Sequence record: LC680885.1
DNA: 64,000 nt
Reading direction: 5' to 3' (one strand)
Shown here one piece after another: positions 63 to 11,051 of this stretch; position 1 is the stretch's first letter; each line of letters starts with the position of its first letter. Position numbers and translations under genes: made by a program. The notes beneath the pieces were generated by a model that searched no databases, was not told the DNA's origin, and worked only from the letters and a program-made list of their open reading frames with translations.

Positions 63-3000
63 ATGGCAGAAGTTTTTAATAAAGATTTAAAAGAAATAGT
101 TCACGATAATATGATGATATATTTTAATGAAATTAACACTAACCGTCAAATACCAGATATTAGAGATGGTTTGAAACCTATTCAAAGAAAAATACTTTAT
201 ATTATGTATAAAAATGGTTATAGATCTGATAAGAAATTTGCTAAATCAGCTAGAATAGCTGGTGACACTACTATATTACACCCACATAGTAATGATGGTA
301 TTTATGATTCTGCAGTTAATATGGTTACACCGTTTTCTATGAACCAACCATTAATTGAAGGACATGGTGCATTTGGTTCTATTACAGGAGCTTCAGCAGC
401 CGCTTCACGTTATTGTTTAACTGGAGAACATATAGTTGATATGAGTAATGGAGAACTTGTAAGAATTAAAGATATAGTACCTCATAGTGAATTAGACAGT
501 GATAATAAAATTGATAAAGTTGTCATGGACTTTAGACGTAAACCAGTTAAAGCAATTAAATTCTTTAATTCAGGTAAACATAATGTAATGGAATTAAACA
601 CTAATGCAGGCAAAACTATTAAAGCCACACCAAATCATCCTTTATTAACTGTAATCAAACACCCAACAAAAGGATTAGATTTCAAATGGAAAACAATGGA
701 TGAAATTAAAGAAGGAGATTATTTAATCAACAGAACTATGATTAAAAATGATCTCAAAGATTTTAGAAGTAAAAATCTTAATGAAAATGAAAAAGAAAGC
801 TTTAAAAAATGGGGAGAAATTCTTTCTAATAAATATTTTAATAGAACTTTAGATCCTGAATATGGAGTATTAATGAGAAGTATTGAAACTGAAAAGAGTC
901 TTCCTAATAAAGTATTAGAAGCTTGTTTAGGTTATAAAAGAGAATTCTTATTAGAGTTATTTAAACAAGATGGATTTATTGTAGATAATATTGGTTTAGT
1001 TATCGAAAGTCATAGTAAAAGATTCTTGCAAGAAATAGCTACTTTATTATCTCAATTTGGTATTTATTCTGTGATATCATTATTCAGTGATAGTGATTAT
1101 AGATTACAAATTCAAGATATTCACTCACTTAAGAATTTATCTAAACACTTAATTAAAGATGATGATTTATTTAAAGATAAAATTGATGAAATTATTGATA
1201 TGTATAGAAATTTAGAAAGTAATAATCCATATCAAGTTATTCCTTATTTAGATGAAGTATTAGATGAGAGAAAAATGACTTCTTATCTATATCCAGAGTT
1301 ATTTAATACTAGAAAGAATTTCTTAAATAACTTTAATTTACTTGAAGAAGAATACGGTATTGAAATTGAAGAAAGAGATCATTTAATGTTATTTATCTCT
1401 AAATACTTAGATAACTATACTTATTTTGAACAAGTAGAAAGTATTGAAGAGTTGGAAGAAGAGGAAGTAGTTTATTCTATTAAAGTTGATACAGATGATC
1501 ATTCATTTATGTCTGAAGGATTTATTCATCATAATACAGAAATGAGATTAAATAAATTCTCAGAAAGAAATTTATTAGATAATATCAATGATAATGCAGT
1601 TAATATGGTTAAGAACTTTGATGGATCAATGTTAGAACCTTTAGTGTTACCTTCTAAATTACCTTATGTATTAGTTAATGGTTCATTTGGTATTGGTGGT
1701 GGAGGACATAGATCTGATTTGCCACCACATTCTACTGAAGATGTAATTAATATTACTATTGACAGAATTAAAAATCCTAATAAGAAATTAAAAACACTTA
1801 TTAAAGATAATAAATTTAAACCACAATTTCCTTATGGTGGAGAAGCATTTTGTGATGATTTAGAGAAATGTTATCGTACAGGTAAAGGTTCTATGTTATT
1901 AAGATCTGTAGTTGAAAAAGATGAAAGTAAAATGACTCTTACAATTAAAGAAATTCCTTATAACGTTACTTTGACTAGGGTTAAAGAAGCTATCAGAGAA
2001 GCACATAAAGAGGAACAATTAGATGGTCTTAAAAATATTAGTGACGGAACTCAAAACGGAGATGTTCGTTTAATTCTTCAATATACAAAATCTTCTGACT
2101 TAGATTTAGCATTAAATCAATTGTATAAAGTTAAGACAATTACTTCTAGAGTTAACTTTGATGTTAAATTAGTAGATAATAATAAGCTAGTGGAAACTAA
2201 TTTATTAGGTATTATTGATAGATGGATTGAATTTAGACAATCAACTGTGAAACGTTTTAAATCATTTAAAATTAAAGATTTAAGAAGTCGTATTCATATT
2301 ATTGAAGGTCTATTAGTTGTATTAGATTCTAAGAATATCGATGAATTAATTAAAATAGTTAAATCTGGTAAAGGTAAAGAAGATATTATTGATGTAGTTA
2401 GTAAGAAATTTGGTATATCTCATGCACAAGCTTCTTATGTAGCTGAAATGAAACTATATACAATTAATAATCTTGAAATCAACAAATTGGTTGAAGAAAA
2501 GAAAGAAAAAGAAAAGATTGTTAATGAAGAAATGGTATACATGAAAGATGTAAGTAAACTGAATGATCTTATTATTAATGAAATGAAAGAAATTAAGAAA
2601 GATAAAAATACACTTAAACCATCTAGATTAACTAAGTACTCTGATATTGATTTTAAAAATGATAATAAAGAATTATTAATTAAAGATGAAGATTTCATGT
2701 GTATTATTACTAGACAAAATAAGATTAAGAAAGTTAAAGATGAAATTAGTAAACCTCAAAAGAGAAATGGTAAAGGTATCTCTATTGGTAAATTATCAGA
2801 TGGTGATATTCCATTAAACATCTTTAATGCTAATAGTAAAGATAACTTATTCTTAATTACTGATACAGGAAAAATATTCTATGATAAAGTTTATGAATTC
2901 CCTGAAATTAAATCATTGAATAACTTTGGTAAAGATATTAGTAGATTTGTTAAGAATGAAAAGATTATTAAAGCATTTACTTTAACTGATGAAGAATTTA

Positions 3001-3617
3001 AAGATCCAGATACAGCTTTTGTAGTAACAACAGCTTTGAATAAAACTAAAATGGTTATGGTTGAAGAAATTAAAAAATCTGGTGTAATTCTTATGAAATT
3101 AAATGAAGATGATAAAGTTATCAATGTTCATAATGTACATTCTAAGAAACCATTTAATTTAATAGCTATATCTGAAAAAGGTAATGCTATTAGATTCTCA
3201 AGTGAATTAATTCCAGTTCAAAATAGAAATACAATTGGTTCTTCTATATTCAGTAATACAACTATTAATAAAGATAATAAAGTTGCTTCAACTGTAGTTG
3301 ATTCTGGACAAGATAAGATGTTAATAGTAACTCATAAAGGTTTAGCTAAACAAATTATGACTGAAGACATTCCAGTTAAATCTAGAATGATTAAAGGTGT
3401 AATTGCAGCTAAATTTAAAAATGAAAAAGATTCTGTAATGTATATTAGTATGATAGATGATGAAGAAGATAATCTATTATTAGTTACTGAAAACAAAACT
3501 ATCAATGTACCTTTAAAAGAAATCAATACGTATAAAAGAACAACTTATGGTAATCCAGTAATGAAACTTAATGATAACGAATTCTGTATAGATTCTTCTA
3601 TCATTAAACATAATTAG
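63..3617 (+). CDS. gyrA: DNA gyrase subunit A precursor containing an intein
   Basis: DGLKPIQRKILY, HPHSNDGIY, GHGAFGS..AAASRY catalytic-Tyr region; C-terminal pinwheel repeats with GyrA-box-like QKRNGKG. Confidence 0.95.
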   Translation: MAEVFNKDLKEIVHDNMMIYFNEINTNRQIPDIRDGLKPIQRKILYIMYKNGYRSDKKFAKSARIAGDTTILHPHSNDGIYDSAVNMVTPFSMNQPLIEGHGAFGSITGASAAASRYCLTGEHIVDMSNGELVRIKDIVPHSELDSDNKIDKVVMDFRRKPVKAIKFFNSGKHNVMELNTNAGKTIKATPNHPLLTVIKHPTKGLDFKWKTMDEIKEGDYLINRTMIKNDLKDFRSKNLNENEKESFKKWGEILSNKYFNRTLDPEYGVLMRSIETEKSLPNKVLEACLGYKREFLLELFKQDGFIVDNIGLVIESHSKRFLQEIATLLSQFGIYSVISLFSDSDYRLQIQDIHSLKNLSKHLIKDDDLFKDKIDEIIDMYRNLESNNPYQVIPYLDEVLDERKMTSYLYPELFNTRKNFLNNFNLLEEEYGIEIEERDHLMLFISKYLDNYTYFEQVESIEELEEEEVVYSIKVDTDDHSFMSEGFIHHNTEMRLNKFSERNLLDNINDNAVNMVKNFDGSMLEPLVLPSKLPYVLVNGSFGIGGGGHRSDLPPHSTEDVINITIDRIKNPNKKLKTLIKDNKFKPQFPYGGEAFCDDLEKCYRTGKGSMLLRSVVEKDESKMTLTIKEIPYNVTLTRVKEAIREAHKEEQLDGLKNISDGTQNGDVRLILQYTKSSDLDLALNQLYKVKTITSRVNFDVKLVDNNKLVETNLLGIIDRWIEFRQSTVKRFKSFKIKDLRSRIHIIEGLLVVLDSKNIDELIKIVKSGKGKEDIIDVVSKKFGISHAQASYVAEMKLYTINNLEINKLVEEKKEKEKIVNEEMVYMKDVSKLNDLIINEMKEIKKDKNTLKPSRLTKYSDIDFKNDNKELLIKDEDFMCIITRQNKIKKVKDEISKPQKRNGKGISIGKLSDGDIPLNIFNANSKDNLFLITDTGKIFYDKVYEFPEIKSLNNFGKDISRFVKNEKIIKAFTLTDEEFKDPDTAFVVTTALNKTKMVMVEEIKKSGVILMKLNEDDKVINVHNVHSKKPFNLIAISEKGNAIRFSSELIPVQNRNTIGSSIFSNTTINKDNKVASTVVDSGQDKMLIVTHKGLAKQIMTEDIPVKSRMIKGVIAAKFKNEKDSVMYISMIDDEEDNLLLVTENKTINVPLKEINTYKRTTYGNPVMKLNDNEFCIDSSIIKHN
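414..1535 (+). mobile_element. Intein (374 aa) in GyrA with degenerate LAGLIDADG domain
   Basis: Starts CLTGEHIV right after SRY; block B IKATPNHPLL; ends VYSIKV..FIHHN then Thr; block E-like FLLELFKQDG and block H-like SKRFLQEIATLLSQFGI. Confidence 0.93.
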
Positions 3618-3933: not shown

Positions 3934-5614
3934 TTGGAAAAGAAATATATTAGATGTAATTCATGTAGTTCAGTACAAGAATATAGTGAAGATATTACAT
4001 CTTGTTCGGAATGTAGTTCTGAAAATATTTCAGTCATTAAATCTCCTGTTGATTTAGTTAATGAAGCTGAAGTATTAGTTACAGAATCTGAAATGGATTT
4101 CTTATTAGACTATAATGATTATCAAGAATACGATAAAAAAGGCAAATCTTGTTGGTTTGATATATATTTAATTAAGTATCCTAGAGATAATACTCAAATT
4201 AAACATATTGTATTACAGAATCAAAAAGGAAGAGAAGAAGATTTATTAATTGATTACGCTGGAGACGATAAAGGTGGTAATCCTATTGTAATAAATGATA
4301 CAGGAAGTATTAAGACTGTATTAAATGATGTTGATACTTTATCTGAAGTTGTTAAAGTTAGATTCTTAAGTAAAGAATCAACTAAGAGAAGAGGTAAAGA
4401 AGATTTTGGTTTAAATTCAGAAGAATACGTATCATTTAATAAAGATAAATATAATTTTTATAATGATGCTAAATTAAGAACTTTAGTTAAAGTTTTAGAA
4501 TCAATGGGCAACACATTATTCTTAGATAGCAAAAGTGATATTGTATGGAATAAAATATTCACTGAACACAATGTACTTAATTCACCTTTATTTACTTATC
4601 AAGAAGTAATGGATTACAATGAGACTAATCTTTATAAAGAATATGGAGATTATGAATTTGAAGAAAGATTAGAAGACGTTATATACGAATATCAATTAGA
4701 AAATGAAATTGGTGTATTTAATTTCTTATATAATAAAAATAAAGGTAATAAGCCTAAATTTACTGAAGATATGGAAGAAGTATATGCTACAGTAACTCCA
4801 TCTATGTTGTTATCTGATGATTTTAAAATGTCAGAAGATCACGGTAGAATTAATCCGAATGTATTGTCTTTATTATACTTTAAAATATTAGAAAAGAAAT
4901 TAGGTATTAGATCAATTGAATTAGTAACATATGTAAATTCTAATAGAGATGACATAATTCTATTCCCTGTTTCTTATAACGGTCAAGGATATGTATTAGC
5001 TGACTTTAAATTAGACAGTCCTATAGTTTTTAAAAATATGGATGATGTTAATAAATATTGTGCATACCAATTTGGATATGATCAAGAAAATGAAGAAAAT
5101 GAAAATATATTTAAATTCTCAGTTAAAGAAGTACCTGCTGAATTTAATTTCCAAAAAGCTATTTCAAGTAATATGGAAATAATTGAAAGATTCTTTATGA
5201 AATTCAATGAGAATACTTTAAATGAAACTGTATTAGAACCAGAATCAATTTTAAATGAAGCTGTTGGAGATAATAAAAAGAAACGTCAAGAAATACAAAA
5301 TAAAATATTAGACGTTATTTCTTCATTAGACAAAGATCAATCTAATATGAATAAATATAAAACATTCTTTGATGAAATGAATGATGAAGAATTCATGAGA
5401 TATATTAAGAGATTTGTTAATAGTAATGAAAACTTCTACATTGAAGTATTACCTAATAAATCTGAAGCTGGATTTAAAGAAGTTGAAGAAGCTTTAAACA
5501 AACTTGATGTACCTATGAATGAATTTGTTTATTATCGACATGATGGAAATAAAGATGATCCTTTAAGAACTAGATATAAAGTTCCAGTAGGGTATTTGCA
5601 TGTAAAACGTCTAC
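3934..5614 (+). CDS. rpoB: Virion RNA polymerase beta subunit C-terminal part, exon 1
   Basis: Ends VPVGYLHVKRL at the GTGTG 5' splice site; joins exon 2 in frame; N-terminal CxxC..CxxC extension. Confidence 0.82.
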
Positions 5615-5866
5615 GTGTGAAACGTTACACAAGAAAGACAATGAAGATTGTTGAGGATTGTGTGGCATAATAAATTATGCTAACTTTTTAGTTGAATAAG
5701 CAGTATCTACCTATAAAGATACGATATGCTATTAATAATACTCCCGCATGTATAAAAAGTGATTTTTATATGTGAAGCCGGGTGAAGACACTATATTTTA
5801 ATTATAGTGGTTAGGGAAATGTATATGGTTAGGAACACAAACTATTTATGAATGTCCTTTATATAT

Positions 5867-5892
5867 TAGTATTAAATGTAGACTTAATACTA
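5867..5892 (+). other. EBS1 hairpin of the group II intron
   Basis: 9-bp stem TAGTATTAA/TTAATACTA; loop ATGTAGAC pairs with exon 5609-5614 GTCTAC. Confidence 0.85.
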
Positions 5893-6096
5893 TGATTTAA
5901 TTGATAGGTTATTAAATCTCTTAACGGAATATAAAGGGAACAGATAGAACCTAAGTACATTTATTTACCTAGACTAAAAGGAACGTTTGATATCTCATAA
6001 TTTTTTATGAGAAGTAAGAGAGAATGTAGTACCATTGAAGCTATGATAATAAGTAGTGGAGGGAAAGTTCTTAGTCATAAAAAGCTCTAATCCTTT

Positions 6097-7446
6097 ATGA
6101 ACATTTCTTTATTCTTAGATAAAGGGATGATAACAATGAATAAAGGAAGAACAATACCAAAAGAAGTTTTTGTTGAAAGGTTAAATAATTTAGATGACAT
6201 TGATAAGTATGAATTCCTTATAGAAGATTATAAAGGAGTTACTAAGAAATATACTTTTAAACATACAGAATGTGATCATGAATTTCAAATGACCGGAAAA
6301 AACTTTTTAAATGGACAAAGATGTCCAAAATGTGCTCAAAATAAAAGAAACCAATCAAATGTCTTGGAAGATGAAAAAATAATCAATAGGGTTAAAGATT
6401 TAAATTTTGATATTATTAAATATAATGGTAAGACTCTTAAAAATGATTTTATGTGTAAAAAATGTAATTATGAATTTAATTGCACCTTTAAATTCCTTTT
6501 CTCACAAAAAGAGTGTCCTTACTGTGGACTAAAAAAGGTTGATAAAATCAATAAGAATATCGATAGCTTACAAAGAAAGCTAGATGAAAAAGGATATACT
6601 TTAGATATTATACCAGAGTATTTTAATTATACTAAAAAATCTAAATTCAAATGTAGAAATTGTAATGAGTACCTATTAGAATATTATAATAATATTAAAA
6701 ATTTAAATAAACCTCAGAATTGTAAATGTTTCGTAAAGAAACGATTAAACATGCTTCCAAGTTATAAGAAGAAATTAGAAAAATATGATAGTGATTACAA
6801 AATCTTTGATGAGACTTATATAAACTCTAAAACGCCATGTAAATTTAAACATTTAACTTGTGGTACTGAATTCCAAAAAAGACCGGCTGACTTCTTTTCA
6901 AATAGTCAAAAATGTCCTAAATGCGTTATGATTAATAAGAATAAGTATACAGATAAACAAGTTGAGAATATATTGTCTGATACTATGTTTGAAATTACCG
7001 GAGAATATTTTGGAAGTAAAGAAAAAACTGAGTTTAAATGTATGAATTGTGGACATGATTTCACATCAACTCTGATGTCTATATTAAATGGGAAAAAATG
7101 CGGTAAATGTGATTCTAGAGAAAGTTTAGGAGAATCTAGAATCAACAAATTCCTAGTTGACAACAATATAGATTTTGAAAGAGAAAAGTCATTTGATGGT
7201 TTAGAGTATAAATCTAAATTGAGATTTGATTTCTATGTAAAAGACAAAAACCTTCTTATAGAATTTGATGGAGCACAACATTTTGGTCCTATTGAAATAT
7301 TTGGTGGGGAAGATAGATTTAACGAAGATCAAATAAGAGACAATTTAAAAAATAAATACTGCCAAGATAATAACATTGATCTCCTTAGAATCCCTTATAC
7401 AGATATAAGAAATATTGATAAAATATTAGAGCAGAAATTTTTATGA
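6097..7446 (+). CDS. Intron-encoded putative homing endonuclease: five Zn-ribbon repeats plus a Vsr/DUF559-like PD-(D/E)xK domain (probable start 6136)
   Basis: HTECDHEF..CPKC-type repeats; C-terminal RFDFY..LLIEFDGAQHF..RDNLKNKYC..LLRI; no RT/YADD motif. Confidence 0.85.
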   Translation: MNISLFLDKGMITMNKGRTIPKEVFVERLNNLDDIDKYEFLIEDYKGVTKKYTFKHTECDHEFQMTGKNFLNGQRCPKCAQNKRNQSNVLEDEKIINRVKDLNFDIIKYNGKTLKNDFMCKKCNYEFNCTFKFLFSQKECPYCGLKKVDKINKNIDSLQRKLDEKGYTLDIIPEYFNYTKKSKFKCRNCNEYLLEYYNNIKNLNKPQNCKCFVKKRLNMLPSYKKKLEKYDSDYKIFDETYINSKTPCKFKHLTCGTEFQKRPADFFSNSQKCPKCVMINKNKYTDKQVENILSDTMFEITGEYFGSKEKTEFKCMNCGHDFTSTLMSILNGKKCGKCDSRESLGESRINKFLVDNNIDFEREKSFDGLEYKSKLRFDFYVKDKNLLIEFDGAQHFGPIEIFGGEDRFNEDQIRDNLKNKYCQDNNIDLLRIPYTDIRNIDKILEQKFL

Positions 7447-7450
7447 TGGA

Positions 7451-7484
7451 AAGCCGTATGAGGCGAAAGTCTCACGTACGGTTT
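7451..7484 (+). ncRNA. Group II intron domain V (catalytic)
   Basis: AAGCCGTATGAGGC-GAAA-GTCTC-AC-GTACGGTTT: AGC triad, GNRA loop, AC bulge, 9+5 bp. Confidence 0.95.
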
Positions 7485-7532
7485 GGTGCAGGGGAAAAGA
7501 GGTACGTTTAGTATACTCTTACCTATTGCAAT

Positions 7533-7894
7533 AACAATTACTTTCGAAGAAGAATGCATACAGTTTAGATGCTTCAACTAGATCAATGAAGACAGGTCAA
7601 TTAACTTCATCTGACAAAGTGGCAAGTGTATCAAATATGGAAGCTTCTGCATTGAAAGCTATTGGAGCTCAAGATATCTTAAGAGAATTGATGGGTCCAC
7701 GTTCAGACTCTATGAATGCTAAGCAAGAATTAAATAAAAACATCTCTATGTATGGATATTCTCGTTTAGAGGATTTACCAGATGATCTTTCTGATAAGAC
7801 TACATTAAATACTACTTTCTATTATTTACTTGGTGCTGGTATAGAATCTGATTTACTTAAAGACACTAGACCTGATTATGATCAAGAAGAATAA
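7533..7894 (+). CDS. rpoB: Virion RNA polymerase beta subunit C-terminal part, exon 2
   Basis: Spliced: KRL-QQLLSKKNAYSLDASTRSMKTGQ..VSNMEASALKAIGAQDILRELMGPRSD, like the bacterial beta GEMEVWALEAYGA..LQEMLT.KSD region; spliced product 680 aa. Confidence 0.85.
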
Positions 7895-10080: not shown

Positions 10081-10455
10081 ATGAAAAAATTAATGATTTT
10101 AGGTCTAACAATATTTTTAACAGTTATTTTAGCAGCATGTAGTGGTGAAGAAAAGAACCCTAGTGAAGAAACAGCAAAAGGAGATAGTTATAAATTAATA
10201 TATTACGAAATTTTAAATAATGGAGATAGTGATTATCCTAGAGTGGAAATTGCTTATGAAAATAGAATTAAAGAAGTTCAATCCGAATCTATTGATATCG
10301 ATAATTTAATTGAGCATGTCTCAAAAGATCCAAAAGAAAAACCTAAATTAGTTATTGACGGTGATGAGTATCATGTATATAGACAACCTTACATGACTTA
10401 TAATCAAGAAGATATTGAAGGTGAAGTAGAAAGTAAAGAGGAAGTGAAAAAATAA
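10081..10455 (+). CDS. lipoprotein
   Basis: MKK-hydrophobic signal with lipobox LAAC. Confidence 0.75.
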   Translation: MKKLMILGLTIFLTVILAACSGEEKNPSEETAKGDSYKLIYYEILNNGDSDYPRVEIAYENRIKEVQSESIDIDNLIEHVSKDPKEKPKLVIDGDEYHVYRQPYMTYNQEDIEGEVESKEEVKK

Positions 10456-11051
10456 TGAAAAAGTTTTCTATGATCCTAGTATCAATAATTACATTATTAG
10501 CATTCGTTAGTCAAGATGCATTAGCTATTGGAAGTTCAACTTCCAGTAGTTCTTCATCTTCTTCATCAGTCAGCTCATCTGCATCGAGATCATCAACTTC
10601 ATCAAGTATGAGTTCTTCATCATCAGCAAGTAGATCAGCTATGCAAAGTAGTATGAATGCTCAAAATAATGCTAACAGTGCAAGTAGAAATAGTTCATTG
10701 AACAGTAGTATGAGTAGAAATAATTCATCATTTTCATTAACTAACCCAAATAGTATGTATAATAGAAATAATCAAATGAATTCATATAATTCACAGCTTA
10801 GACAAAGTAATTATATGAATAATATGTTGATGTACTATTTATTATTTAATGGTATTAATAATCAAAATAACTTAAAGAAACAGAAATCAATTTTAATGAA
10901 TCAAATGAATAAAGATCAAAAGTTATATACAGTGACAATTAAAACTAAAGATAATAAAAAGCAATTGTTAACTGTCACTAAAAAGGATTATGATAAAATT
11001 AAAGAAGGAGATACTGTTAAATATTCTAATAATAAATTAGAAATAAAATAA
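10455..11051 (+). CDS. exported Ser/Asn-rich low-complexity protein
   Basis: Signal peptide ending ALA; long Ser run; small beta-rich C-terminal domain; start overlaps the previous stop. Confidence 0.7.
   Translation: MKKFSMILVSIITLLAFVSQDALAIGSSTSSSSSSSSSVSSSASRSSTSSSMSSSSSASRSAMQSSMNAQNNANSASRNSSLNSSMSRNNSSFSLTNPNSMYNRNNQMNSYNSQLRQSNYMNNMLMYYLLFNGINNQNNLKKQKSILMNQMNKDQKLYTVTIKTKDNKKQLLTVTKKDYDKIKEGDTVKYSNNKLEIK

What the first reader, a model, noticed from the sequence alone, without database searches (positions are those of the whole stretch)
5615..7532. Group IIB intron in a lytic jumbo phage RNA polymerase gene, with no reverse transcriptase
Seen: GTGTG 5' end; DI closing helix AAACGTT(5620)/AACGTTT(5982); EBS1 loop GTAGAC(5878-5883) exactly complementary to the last 6 exon nt GTCTAC; DII hairpin; DIII with the AGTACC..GAAG..GGAGGGAAAG pattern; 34-nt DV with AGC triad, GAAA loop and AC bulge; DVI with bulged A at -8 and a RAY end (both IIB traits); the joined exons are in frame. 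Known: bacterial group II introns are normally RT-encoding retroelements, rarely in essential genes, and phage RNAP introns described in this group are group I. Here the ribozyme must splice for virion RNAP to be made. I cannot check whether this particular intron has been reported.
Basis: partly seen in the sequence, partly recalled or inferred. Interest (0 to 1): 0.95.

Follow-up and report, generated by a model that had tools for sequence, protein, structure and literature searches.

The report
Known group II intron, phage RNAP gene
A self-splicing group II intron really does interrupt the virion RNA polymerase beta-subunit gene of Staphylococcus jumbo phage S6, and it carries a homing endonuclease gene instead of a reverse transcriptase, but this exact intron was already catalogued in a 2025 paper.

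Summary
The window is Staphylococcus jumbo phage S6 (LC680885). Bases 5615-7532 are a 1918-nt group II intron. Two Rfam models pass their gathering scores, and DV/DVI ends exactly at 7532. The exons join in frame and match adjacent halves of one 'RNAP beta subunit' profile. Six copies exist at the same site. On an alignment of five of them (S6 left out), the six-domain structure and the EBS1-IBS1 pairing show extensive compensatory covariation.

It encodes a homing endonuclease with five treble-clef zinc-ribbon repeats and a Vsr-like nuclease domain. 'No RT' is true, but the intron is not ORF-less. Phage PALS_2 has the same intron without this 1.35-kb cassette. DC4 and SA1 have the empty site.

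It is not new. Merk, Jones & Eddy (NAR 2025, PMC12350094, Table S1) list this intron with identical coordinates, subtype IIB, host gene and HEG.

What I add:
- EBS1-IBS1 covariation, which their table marks '-' for S6
- three uncultured copies at the same site
- a possible short co-conversion tract covering IBS1
- an intron hot-spot in this gene

Splicing and homing remain untested experimentally.

The parts
3934..5614 (+). Exon 1 of the virion RNAP beta C-terminal subunit gene. It is annotated S6_1710, and that annotation wrongly runs on into the intron to a stop at 5670.
   Evidence: tblastn finds homologs in 10 Staphylococcus jumbo phages, AR9, PBS1, LPJP1 and phiR1-37. PHROG 3233 'RNA polymerase beta subunit' profile positions 2-113 match aa 448-559. 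AR9 g078 is annotated as a virion RNAP subunit.
5609..5614 (+). IBS1 (GUCUAC)
   Evidence: It is exactly complementary to EBS1 at 5878-5883. Five different IBS1/EBS1 combinations occur in six copies and all are complementary.
5615..7532 (+). Group II (IIB-type) intron, 1918 nt, GUGUG...AAU
   Evidence: Rfam hits. The in-frame exon junction. Empty-site alleles in DC4, SA1 and Goe21. The same coordinates appear in Merk et al. Table S1.
5620..5988 (+). Domain I, with closing helix 5620-5626/5982-5988
   Evidence: The MFE fold of S6 DI and of the ORF-less PALS_2 copy, z = -5.7. Most DI helices covary in the 5-sequence alignment.
5846..5851 (+). Tentative EBS2 (UUUAUG), pairing with exon -14..-9 (UGUAAA)
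   Evidence: The homologous alignment columns give an 8-bp match in L029, 6 bp in PALS_2/S6 and 5 bp in LPJP1, but are ambiguous in L018 and L030. Not established.
5878..5883 (+). EBS1 (GUAGAC) in an 8-nt hairpin loop
   Evidence: The EBS1-IBS1 helix is 100% paired, with 3 covarying positions.
5993..6012 (+). Domain II hairpin
   Evidence: MFE fold. Helix 20 has 6 pairs with compensatory changes.
6020..6072 (+). Domain III
   Evidence: MFE fold. Helices 21 and 23 are 100% paired, with covariation.
6074..7448 (+). Domain IV. The basal stem is GUCAUAAAAA / UUUUUAUGAU. An extra 8-bp stem, GCUCUAAU (6085-6092) / AUUAGAGC (7425-7432), closes off the ORF cassette.
   Evidence: Direct reading of the sequence. 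Comparison with the 45-nt DIV hairpin of PALS_2.
6086..7434 (+). About 1.35-kb cassette present in S6 and absent from PALS_2, LPJP1, L018, L030 and L029
   Evidence: Pairwise alignment of S6 and PALS_2: 97.7% identity on both sides of the gap. The other copies are ORF-less.
6136..7446 (+). Homing endonuclease gene (S6_1720), 436 aa: five DUF4379/CapR-like treble-clef zinc-ribbon repeats followed by a Vsr/PD-(D/E)xK-like nuclease domain. The stop codon lies in the 3' strand of the DIV stem.
   Evidence: Pfam DUF4379, E 2e-18, five stretches. PHROG 559/9084/7140 endonuclease families, E 4e-79. AF2 model pLDDT 89. Foldseek matches to Vsr (1cw0_A, 1vsr), probability 1.0. Invariant D365, E376, G379 and K405. 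An AAAGGGA Shine-Dalgarno-like motif lies before ATG 6136.
7451..7484 (+). Domain V (34 nt; AGC triad, GAAA loop, AC bulge)
   Evidence: Rfam alignment and fold. It is almost invariant across the five aligned copies, with one compensatory GC-to-AU pair in L018.
7487..7530 (+). Domain VI, with bulged branch-point candidate A7525
   Evidence: Nine pairs carry compensatory changes. All four pairs of the basal helix (UGCA/UGCA in S6) differ in LPJP1 (ACUG/CAGU). The CCUAU segment with the bulged A is invariant.
7533..7894 (+). Exon 2 of the vRNAP beta-C gene. The database annotation S6_1730 starts at an internal Met at 7586.
   Evidence: PHROG 3233 profile positions 116-223 match aa 1-108. Weak Pfam RNA_pol_Rpb2_7 hit. 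The sequence is contiguous with exon 1 in DC4 and SA1.

Best explanation
Window 5615-7532 is a compact IIB-type group II ribozyme. Its core is about 570 nt, and it interrupts the virion RNAP beta C-terminal subunit gene of phage S6 inside its most conserved motif.

Splicing (inferred). The intron is transcribed with the gene and folds into six domains. It recognises the 5' exon through EBS1-IBS1. It is removed by branching at A7525, which rejoins the codon C|AA so that a 681-aa subunit can be translated. It has no reverse transcriptase or maturase.

Mobility (inferred). The DIV loop carries a separately acquired cassette encoding a homing endonuclease with zinc-ribbon repeats and a Vsr-like nuclease domain. 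The most likely mechanism is the one used by group I introns: in a mixed infection the endonuclease cuts the intron-less allele near the insertion site, and double-strand-break repair copies the intron, together with a few flanking exon bases that include IBS1, from the intron-bearing genome.

Shown here:
- the sequence and structure hallmarks
- the covariation
- the in-frame junction
- the empty-site and ORF-less alleles
- the fold of the ORF product

Not shown: splicing in vivo, lariat formation, endonuclease activity and its target, and the homing route.
For: Ribozyme:
- Rfam gathering-level hits to DV/DVI and to D1D4-5.
- All hallmark motifs lie at the stated coordinates.
- The natural ORF-less copy folds into six domains with z = -5.7.
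- On five diverged copies, 88% of cells are paired against 39-46% in the slid controls. 80 pairs have changes on both sides against 16-34 in the controls.
- The EBS1-IBS1 helix is 100% paired, with 5 distinct complementary combinations across the six copies.

Junction and host gene:
- The join is in frame.
- The two exons match PHROG 3233 profile positions 2-113 and 116-223.
- DC4, SA1 and Goe21 are contiguous across the site.
- Homology to AR9 g078, annotated as a virion RNAP subunit; the Sokolova review.
- The DC4 homolog was found in virions.

HEG:
- The cassette is absent from PALS_2, whose intron is otherwise 97.7% identical.
- PHROG endonuclease families, E 4e-79.
- Vsr-like fold and a conserved D...ExDGxxH...DxxK core.
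- Relatives are annotated as intron or homing endonucleases in many phages, including AR9 g079, in the homologous gene.

DNA-level transfer:
- S6 exon 1 is DC4-like at nearly all informative sites from -794 to -17.
- It is PALS_2-like at -14, -5 and -2, right beside the intron.

No group II RT:
- A tblastn probe with the LPJP1 intron RT finds none in any Staphylococcus phage among the rows listed.

Independent agreement:
- Merk et al. 2025 Table S1 and text.
Against: - No experiment shows splicing or homing, either here or in the 2025 paper, which says so explicitly.
- No convincing EBS2-IBS2 pairing was found.
- Group II introns usually need a maturase in vivo, and none is evident.
- The nuclease domain reaches Vsr only by fold. 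The Foldseek E-value is about 0.03 on the full-length model. Pfam DUF5889, DUF2726 and DUF559 hits are below their curated cut-offs, and the PDB sequence and profile searches miss it.
- The 'co-conversion' signal rests on only three sites. Two of them are in IBS1 and could instead reflect selection for EBS1 pairing.
- Relatives of S6 are reported to encode a 'retron-like' RT of unknown role. I did not test that protein.
Confidence: 0.82

Rival explanations
1. The intron moves by retrohoming. A reverse transcriptase supplied in trans reverse-splices it into DNA targets, and the endonuclease ORF is a passenger. [quoted passage not shown]
For: - The ribozyme descends from an RT-bearing lineage. 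RT-encoding bacterial and metagenomic introns share 92-98% identical DV/DVI.
- LPJP1 has an RT-encoding sister intron, and Merk et al. propose it acts in trans.
- MarsHill-like phages and DC4 are said to encode an RT.
Against: - No group II-type RT is detected in any Staphylococcus phage among the rows listed.
- The intron-less alleles DC4 (GACUUC) and SA1 (GGCUUC) mismatch the S6 EBS1 at 2 of 6 positions, so they are poor reverse-splicing targets.
- Retron-type RTs lack the maturase X domain (general knowledge).
- The S6 genome contains uracil-substituted DNA, and its compatibility with TPRT is unknown.
Confidence: 0.08
2. The intron no longer splices. The gene is simply split, and the two annotated ORFs (S6_1710 and S6_1730) are translated separately and assemble as a further-fragmented beta subunit.
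For: - Jumbo-phage RNAP subunits are naturally split into several polypeptides.
- GenBank annotates two separate CDSs.
- No splicing data exist.
Against: - The annotated second ORF starts 53 nt after the junction and would drop 18 residues (QQLLSKKNAYSLDASTRS) of the conserved motif. The first would gain a 19-aa intron-encoded tail.
- All ribozyme helices, the AGC triad, the bulged A and EBS1-IBS1 are maintained by compensatory changes across copies that are only 65-74% identical. That indicates selection on RNA function.
- Six independent genomes keep the intron at the same codon.
Confidence: 0.04
3. Splicing in vivo depends on a protein cofactor other than an RT-maturase. Either the zinc-ribbon endonuclease doubles as a maturase, as some LAGLIDADG proteins do for group I introns, or a host or phage RNA chaperone does the job.
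For: - Group II introns rarely self-splice at physiological Mg2+ without a protein (general knowledge).
- The ORF has five nucleic-acid-binding zinc-ribbon modules.
Against: PALS_2, LPJP1, L018, L030 and L029 keep the same ribozyme at the same essential site with no ORF at all. The endonuclease therefore cannot be required for splicing in those phages. A host or phage chaperone is not excluded.
Confidence: 0.06

Closest known systems
Phage group II introns carrying CapR-like/EDxHD-Vsr-like homing endonucleases (Merk, Jones & Eddy, NAR 2025, PMC12350094): AR9, PBS1 and MarsHill vRNAP beta' introns, and this S6 intron itself
   Same: It is the same object. Table S1 lists LC680885 191615-193532, subtype B, D1D4-5, AGC triad, GTGTG...AT, 'viral RNA pol beta', ORF 192136-193443, HEG. 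PALS_2 and LPJP1 are listed as ORF-less versions.
   Different: Nothing differs in kind. Their table marks pseudoknot interactions '-' for S6 and PALS_2. Here EBS1-IBS1 is demonstrated with covariation, three further uncultured copies are added, and the cassette boundaries and flank pattern are described.
Group II introns encoding LAGLIDADG homing endonucleases, in fungal mitochondrial rRNA genes and Thiomargarita (from my own knowledge and as cited in PMC12350094)
   Same: A group II ribozyme whose DIII/DIV region carries a DNA endonuclease instead of an RT. Presumed mobility is by DSB repair, and splicing is independent of a maturase.
   Different: The endonuclease fold is different: a Vsr/PD-(D/E)xK-like domain with zinc-ribbon repeats rather than LAGLIDADG. 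The host is a virulent phage protein-coding gene rather than an organellar or bacterial rRNA gene.
I-Bth0305I / EDxHD family of Vsr-like homing endonucleases from phage group I introns and inteins (as cited in PMC12350094, ref 56)
   Same: A C-terminal Vsr-like nuclease domain with a conserved acidic/His core. These are phage-borne and intron-associated.
   Different: Sequence similarity is too low for HMMER to connect them. The N-terminal DNA-binding modules are DUF4379/CapR-like zinc ribbons. The carrier here is a group II intron, not a group I intron.
Classical bacterial IIB group II retroelements with RT/maturase
   Same: The six-domain ribozyme, GUGYG...AY ends, EBS1-IBS1, and DV/DVI. Their DV/DVI is up to 98% identical over 55 nt to RT-encoding introns in Clostridia-type genomes and metagenomes.
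   Different: There is no RT/maturase and no clear EBS2. It is very AT-rich (27% GC) and compact.

Membership tests
Group II intron (Rfam RF00029 + clan CL00102) | A covariance-model match to DV/DVI and to a D1-D4 model, at or above the gathering score | tested here: met
   66.4 bits against a gathering score of 40, and 44.5 against 34.5. The same two models hit the LPJP1 copy.
Group II intron | 5' GUGYG and 3' AY boundaries at an in-frame exon junction | tested here: met
   GUGUG at 5615 and AAU ending at 7532. The 681-aa in-frame join. Intron-less alleles are contiguous at exactly this point.
Group II intron | DV of about 34 nt with a catalytic AGC triad, a 2-nt bulge and a GNRA loop | tested here: met
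   7451-7484. It is nearly invariant in the five aligned copies.
Group II intron | DVI with a bulged branch-point adenosine 7-8 nt from the 3' splice site | tested here: met
   A7525. The basal helix is fully compensated between copies, and CCUAU is invariant.
Group II intron | A six-domain secondary structure supported by covariation | tested here: met
   80 of 195 pairs have changes on both sides, against 16-34 in the slid controls. 88% of cells are paired against 39-46%. Caveat: the structure was derived from one of the aligned sequences.
Group II intron | EBS1-IBS1 exon-binding pairing | tested here: met
   Six of six copies are complementary, with 5 different sequence combinations. Helix 1 is 100% paired.
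Group II intron (IIA/IIB) | EBS2-IBS2 pairing | tested here: inconclusive
   There is only a tentative candidate at 5846-5851, and it is not consistent in all copies.
Group IIB subclass | An AARC bulge in the lambda-epsilon' region of DI; similarity to classified IIB introns | tested here: met
   GAAUAAGC at about 5694-5701 contains AAGC and is conserved in 4 of the 5 aligned copies. Merk et al. classify the intron as B by this criterion and by comparison with the Zimmerly database. I did not test EBS3-IBS3 independently: the first 3'-exon nucleotide is A in all copies, so no covariation is possible.
Mobile group II retroelement | An intron-encoded RT/maturase in DIV | tested here: not met
   The DIV ORF has no RT or maturase domain. 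No group II RT is found in Staphylococcus phages among the rows listed.
Group II intron | Splicing by lariat formation | not testable with these tools
   This needs RT-PCR or in vitro splicing. The literature I could read reports none for S6.
EDxHD/Vsr-like homing endonucleases | A Vsr / PD-(D/E)xK-type nuclease fold | tested here: met
   In the AF2 model, pLDDT is 96-98 in the C-terminal domain. The best compact Foldseek matches are Vsr 1cw0_A and 1vsr, probability 1.0, TM-score on target 0.53-0.55.
EDxHD/Vsr-like homing endonucleases | Sequence-level family membership (a curated model above its cut-off) | tested here: not met
   DUF5889, DUF2726 and DUF559 are all below their curated cut-offs. 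No PDB hit by sequence or by profile. This matches the paper's description of a 'distantly related outgroup'.
Homing endonuclease (functional sense) | Site-specific cleavage of the intron-less allele, and super-Mendelian inheritance | not testable with these tools
   Only indirect evidence: polymorphic presence of the cassette, relatives in other phage introns, and the flank pattern.

The most novel reading that the evidence does not exclude
The roughly 570-nt AT-rich ribozyme splices efficiently inside S. aureus with no intron-encoded protein at all; five ORF-less copies sit at the same essential site. S6 captures the moment at which a Vsr-like homing endonuclease cassette invaded DIV and turned a retroelement-derived ribozyme into a DNA-homing element. 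That element brings its own IBS1 along by co-conversion, which frees it from the need for a pre-matched target.
Probability: 0.3. Interest if true: 0.55.

Novelty: already known. Interest (0 to 1): 0.25.

Why it matters
The discovery itself has been made. Group II introns exist in phages, they sit in jumbo-phage virion RNAP genes, and some carry Vsr-like homing endonucleases in place of an RT. This intron is listed by coordinate (Merk et al. 2025).

What remains worthwhile is experimental:
- The S6, PALS_2 and DC4 trio offers a natural set of +HEG, ORF-less and empty-site alleles at one locus. It can test whether a group II ribozyme can home purely at the DNA level.
- The same trio can test whether a compact group II ribozyme splices without any maturase in a Gram-positive host.

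For genome annotation, S6_1710 and S6_1730 (and PALS2_042 and PALS2_043) should be joined as one vRNAP beta-C gene.

Tried and rejected
- EBS2-IBS2. Two systematic complementarity scans gave only AU-rich candidates that are not consistent across copies. One long match in S6 (5764-5774) is the 3' strand of a DI hairpin and is absent in LPJP1, so I rejected it as chance.
- IMG/VR scans. The strict DV pattern gave 0 hits. A relaxed pattern gave 10 loci, of which only L018 proved to be related. A protein-based search for the host gene in IMG/VR found nothing.
- Rfam on the Madawaska, LY01, Machias and MarsHill inserts found nothing even at E<=1. On AR9 (L004) only the gathering-threshold search was run, and it also found nothing. 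I classed the first three sets of inserts as group I-like from the P/Q/R/S elements only.
- PDB searches with the nuclease domain as a single sequence and with the family profile did not reach Vsr or I-Bth0305I. Only the fold comparison did.
- The closest HEG relative, P0002 (45% identity), lies on a 2.7-kb ENA contig whose DNA could not be fetched, so its context is unknown.
- The mini group I motif search in the S6 window gave no real hits.
- I considered and rejected the 'split gene without splicing' reading; see the rival explanations.
Full report
IDENTITY OF THE WINDOW AND THE OBSERVATION

The intron region is 100% identical to Staphylococcus jumbo phage S6 (LC680885.1). Window 5615-7532 equals record 191615-193532.

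- GUGUG at 5615.
- The DI closing helix at 5620-5626/5982-5988.
- GUAGAC at 5878-5883, complementary to the last six exon bases, GUCUAC.
- A 34-nt DV at 7451-7484 with the AGC triad, a GAAA loop and an AC bulge.
- DVI with A7525 bulged, 8 nt from the end. The intron ends AAU at 7532.

Rfam gives exactly two gathering-level hits in the whole 64-kb window. Intron_gpII (DV/DVI) scores 66.4 bits at 7449-7532, and group-II-D1D4-5 scores 44.5 bits at 5679-5821.

The exons 3934-5614 and 7533-7894 join in frame to a 681-aa protein.

THE HOST GENE AND THE JUNCTION

The two exon products match adjacent halves of one profile, PHROG 3233 'RNA polymerase beta subunit'. Exon 1 residues 448-559 match profile positions 2-113, and exon 2 residues 1-108 match positions 116-223.

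Homologs occur in ten Staphylococcus jumbo phages, in AR9/PBS1-type Bacillus phages, in Listeria phage LPJP1 and in Yersinia phiR1-37. The AR9 homolog, g078, is annotated as a virion RNAP subunit with an N-terminal HD domain. That matches the description of vRNAP C-beta in the Sokolova review (PMC7598289).

The uninterrupted DC4 homolog, UFVDC4_00134, was detected by LC-MS in purified virions, from one peptide (PMC10638138). 'Virion RNAP beta, C-terminal part' is therefore supported.

A query made of 200 nt of each exon matches DC4, SA1 and Bacillus phage Goe21 without interruption. These are empty-site alleles.

The GenBank records of S6 and PALS_2 annotate the two exons as separate hypothetical proteins.

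A 436-aa ORF lies in DIV, from ATG 6136 (preceded by AAAGGGA) to a stop at 7444-7446.

It is not an RT. The evidence:
- Pfam finds five DUF4379 treble-clef zinc-ribbon stretches and weak CapR matches.
- PHROGs places it in endonuclease families: phrog_559 at E 4e-79, phrog_9084 'homing endonuclease' and phrog_7140 'intron encoded nuclease'.
- A 60-sequence family alignment shows an invariant D365...E376-x-D378-G-x-x-H382...D402-x-x-K405 core.
- An AlphaFold2 model has pLDDT 89 overall and 96-98 in the C-terminal domain.
- Its best compact structural matches are E. coli Vsr endonuclease, 1cw0_A and 1vsr, with probability 1.0 and TM-score on target 0.53-0.55.

By sequence the nuclease domain stays below the Pfam cut-offs for DUF5889, DUF2726 and DUF559. 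It does not reach any PDB entry.

tblastn finds relatives in 509 phage records, many annotated as intron or homing endonucleases. They include AR9 g079, a 'group I intron VSR' endonuclease in the homologous AR9 gene.

NATURAL VARIANTS

Phage PALS_2 has the same intron at the same site, but it is only 581 nt long. It is 97.7% identical to S6 on both sides of a roughly 1.35-kb gap (S6 6086-7434), which falls in the DIV loop.

In S6 the cassette brings an extra 8-bp stem, 6085-6092/7425-7432, and the ORF stop lies in the 3' strand of the DIV basal stem.

LPJP1 has a 626-nt ORF-less copy, 69% identical, at the same codon.

Scanning for the DV sequence and then running local BLAST uncovered three more ORF-less copies in uncultured phage contigs: L018 (IMG/VR), and L030 and L029 (metagenomes). 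All three lie in vRNAP beta-C homologs at the same residue.

Many RT-encoding bacterial and metagenomic introns share only a near-identical DV/DVI, 92-98% over about 55 nt. That is consistent with descent from an RT-bearing lineage.

STRUCTURE AND COVARIATION

The PALS_2 RNA folds into the canonical six-domain layout (MFE -146 kcal/mol, z = -5.7).

I projected that structure, plus EBS1-IBS1, onto the five-sequence alignment (PALS_2, LPJP1, L018, L030, L029):
- 88.1% of cells are paired, against 39-46% when partners are slid.
- 80 pairs have changes on both sides, against 16-34 in the slid controls.
- 0 of 500 shuffles reach the observed values.

The usual caveat applies, because the structure was derived from one of the rows. 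The excess of compensatory changes is nevertheless large.

EBS1-IBS1 takes five forms:
- S6: GUCUAC / GUAGAC.
- PALS_2: GUCUAC / GUAGGC, with one G.U.
- LPJP1 and L018: GACUAC / GUAGUC.
- L030: GGCUAC / GUAGCC.
- L029: GUAUGC / GCAUAC.

The DVI basal helix changes at all four pairs between S6 and LPJP1, while the CCUAU segment with the bulged A is invariant.

Of the 15 S6-versus-PALS_2 differences inside the ribozyme, 3 of the 5 that fall in helices keep a standard pair.

EBS2-IBS2 could not be established. The 3' end is AY, not a conserved RAY.

MOBILITY INFERENCE

S6 exon 1 is far closer to intron-less DC4 than to intron-bearing PALS_2: 98.8% against 89.5% at protein level.

At sites where DC4 and PALS_2 differ, S6 follows DC4 almost everywhere from -794 to -17. 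It follows PALS_2 at -14, -5 and -2, immediately next to the intron, and two of those three sites lie in IBS1.

The intron-less alleles read GACUUC (DC4) and GGCUUC (SA1), which mismatch the S6 EBS1 at two positions.

This fits DNA-level acquisition with a short co-conversion tract that installs IBS1. Selection for pairing after insertion is an alternative. It argues against reverse splicing into DC4-like targets.

A tblastn probe with the LPJP1 intron RT finds no group II RT in any Staphylococcus phage among the rows listed: 60 of 70 hits were shown at E<=0.1. Korn et al. and the DC4 paper do mention a 'retron-like' RT in related phages. I did not examine it.

COMPARISON WITH WHAT IS KNOWN

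[quoted passage not shown] They report 20 introns.

[quoted passage not shown] It also contains the PALS_2 and LPJP1 ORF-less versions.

Their text describes the HEG architecture as CapR/DUF4379/DUF723-like repeats plus a distant EDxHD/Vsr nuclease. It proposes HEG-based homing shared with group I introns, and it states that splicing was not tested.

The finding is therefore correct but already known.

My additions are incremental:
- EBS1-IBS1 with covariation. Their pseudoknot column is '-' for S6 and PALS_2.
- Three further copies at the same site.
- The cassette boundaries.
- The flank pattern.
- The hot-spot described below.

SIDE OBSERVATIONS

The roughly 90 nt around this site form an intron hot-spot:
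- Madawaska has two 146-nt ORF-less introns, identical at 126 of 146 positions. They carry the classical group I P/Q/R/S elements and flank a 35-nt micro-exon that contains the S6 group II site.
- LY01 and Machias have a similar small intron only 3 nt upstream of the S6 site.
- MarsHill has a 1.3-kb HEG-bearing intron 65 nt downstream.
- AR9 exon homology ends 23 nt downstream of the S6 site.

Rfam finds nothing in these small introns, even at E<=1.

The window also holds gyrA with a LAGLIDADG-containing intein at 63-3617. The same feature is annotated in MarsHill.

VERDICT

This is a real, well-formed IIB-type group II intron with a Vsr-like homing endonuclease in a jumbo-phage virion RNAP gene. 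Novelty is nil since 2025, so interest is low. The residual interest is in the untested biochemistry: maturase-free splicing and DNA-level homing of a group II intron.

Noticed in passing
L007 (Madawaska) 780-925 and 961-1106, micro-exon 926-960; also L008 (LY01) and L009 (Machias): Two 146-nt ORF-less introns, identical at 126 of 146 positions, carry the classical group I P/Q/R/S elements (AATTGCTGGGAAAG / AATCAGCATC / GTTCAACGACTAAAT / AAGATATAGTCT). They flank a 35-nt micro-exon in the same vRNAP beta-C gene. They are unusually small for group I introns, and Rfam finds nothing there even at E<=1.
   Followed up: partly
DC4 reference L005 positions about 780-880, equal to the window exon region about 5595-5614 plus 7533-7600: This is an intron hot-spot, with at least five different insertion sites within about 90 nt of the conserved beta motif. 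Relative to the S6 group II site they lie at -21 (Madawaska, LY01, Machias), -3 (LY01, Machias), 0 (S6, PALS_2, LPJP1, L018, L030, L029), +14 (Madawaska), about +23 (AR9, PBS1) and +65 (MarsHill with a HEG; Machias).
   Followed up: partly
L018 about 6151-6654 (-), L030 6597-7158 (-), L029 about 1893-2411 (-): Three uncultured-phage contigs carry ORF-less homologs of this intron at the same codon of vRNAP beta-C homologs. They are IMGVR_UViG_3300043104_000318, CYGL01000309.1 and Ga0172378_10096639, and they are 69-74% identical to PALS_2. L018 and L029 appear to have a second insertion of about 350 nt further downstream in the gene.
   Followed up: partly
L035, L038, L027, L022, L024, L025, L026, L028: RT-encoding group II introns in Clostridia- and Lachnospiraceae-type genomes and in metagenomes share a 92-98% identical DV/DVI (about 55 nt) with the S6 intron but no detectable DI similarity. 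This hints at the bacterial lineage the phage ribozyme came from.
   Followed up: partly
window 5601, 5610, 5613 (exon -14, -5, -2) and 7537, 7549 (exon +5, +17): Synonymous exon differences cluster at the intron. At -14, -5 and -2, S6 matches PALS_2 and not DC4, although the rest of exon 1 is DC4-like. At +5 and +17, S6 has private synonymous changes.
   Followed up: yes
window 3934-5670 and 7586-7894 (S6_1710, S6_1730); PALS2_042 and PALS2_043: The database annotation splits the interrupted gene into two 'hypothetical proteins'. The first runs 19 codons into the intron, and the second starts at an internal Met. Neither record annotates the intron.
   Followed up: yes
window 63-3617: DNA gyrase subunit A is interrupted by an intein with a LAGLIDADG endonuclease domain: Pfam Intein_splicing at residues 129-491 and LAGLIDADG_3 at 291-339. 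The same feature is annotated in MarsHill gp228.
   Followed up: partly
L030 1418-2161 (-) and L020 5540-6394 (-): Homologs of the S6 intron endonuclease, about 33% identical, lie a few kb from group II DV/DVI hits in two uncultured contigs but outside those introns. Their context was not examined.
   Followed up: no
window 10455-11051: A 198-aa ORF with a signal-peptide-like N-terminus and very long Ser/Asn-rich low-complexity stretches. The PALS_2 homolog is labelled 'endo-1,4-beta-xylanase A precursor', which looks like a low-complexity artefact.
   Followed up: no
not in the window (MarsHill-like phages, DC4): Published descriptions say relatives of S6 encode a 'retron-like' RNA-directed DNA polymerase of unknown function. 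The group II RT probe did not detect it. I did not check whether S6 has it, or whether it has any link to the intron.
   Followed up: no
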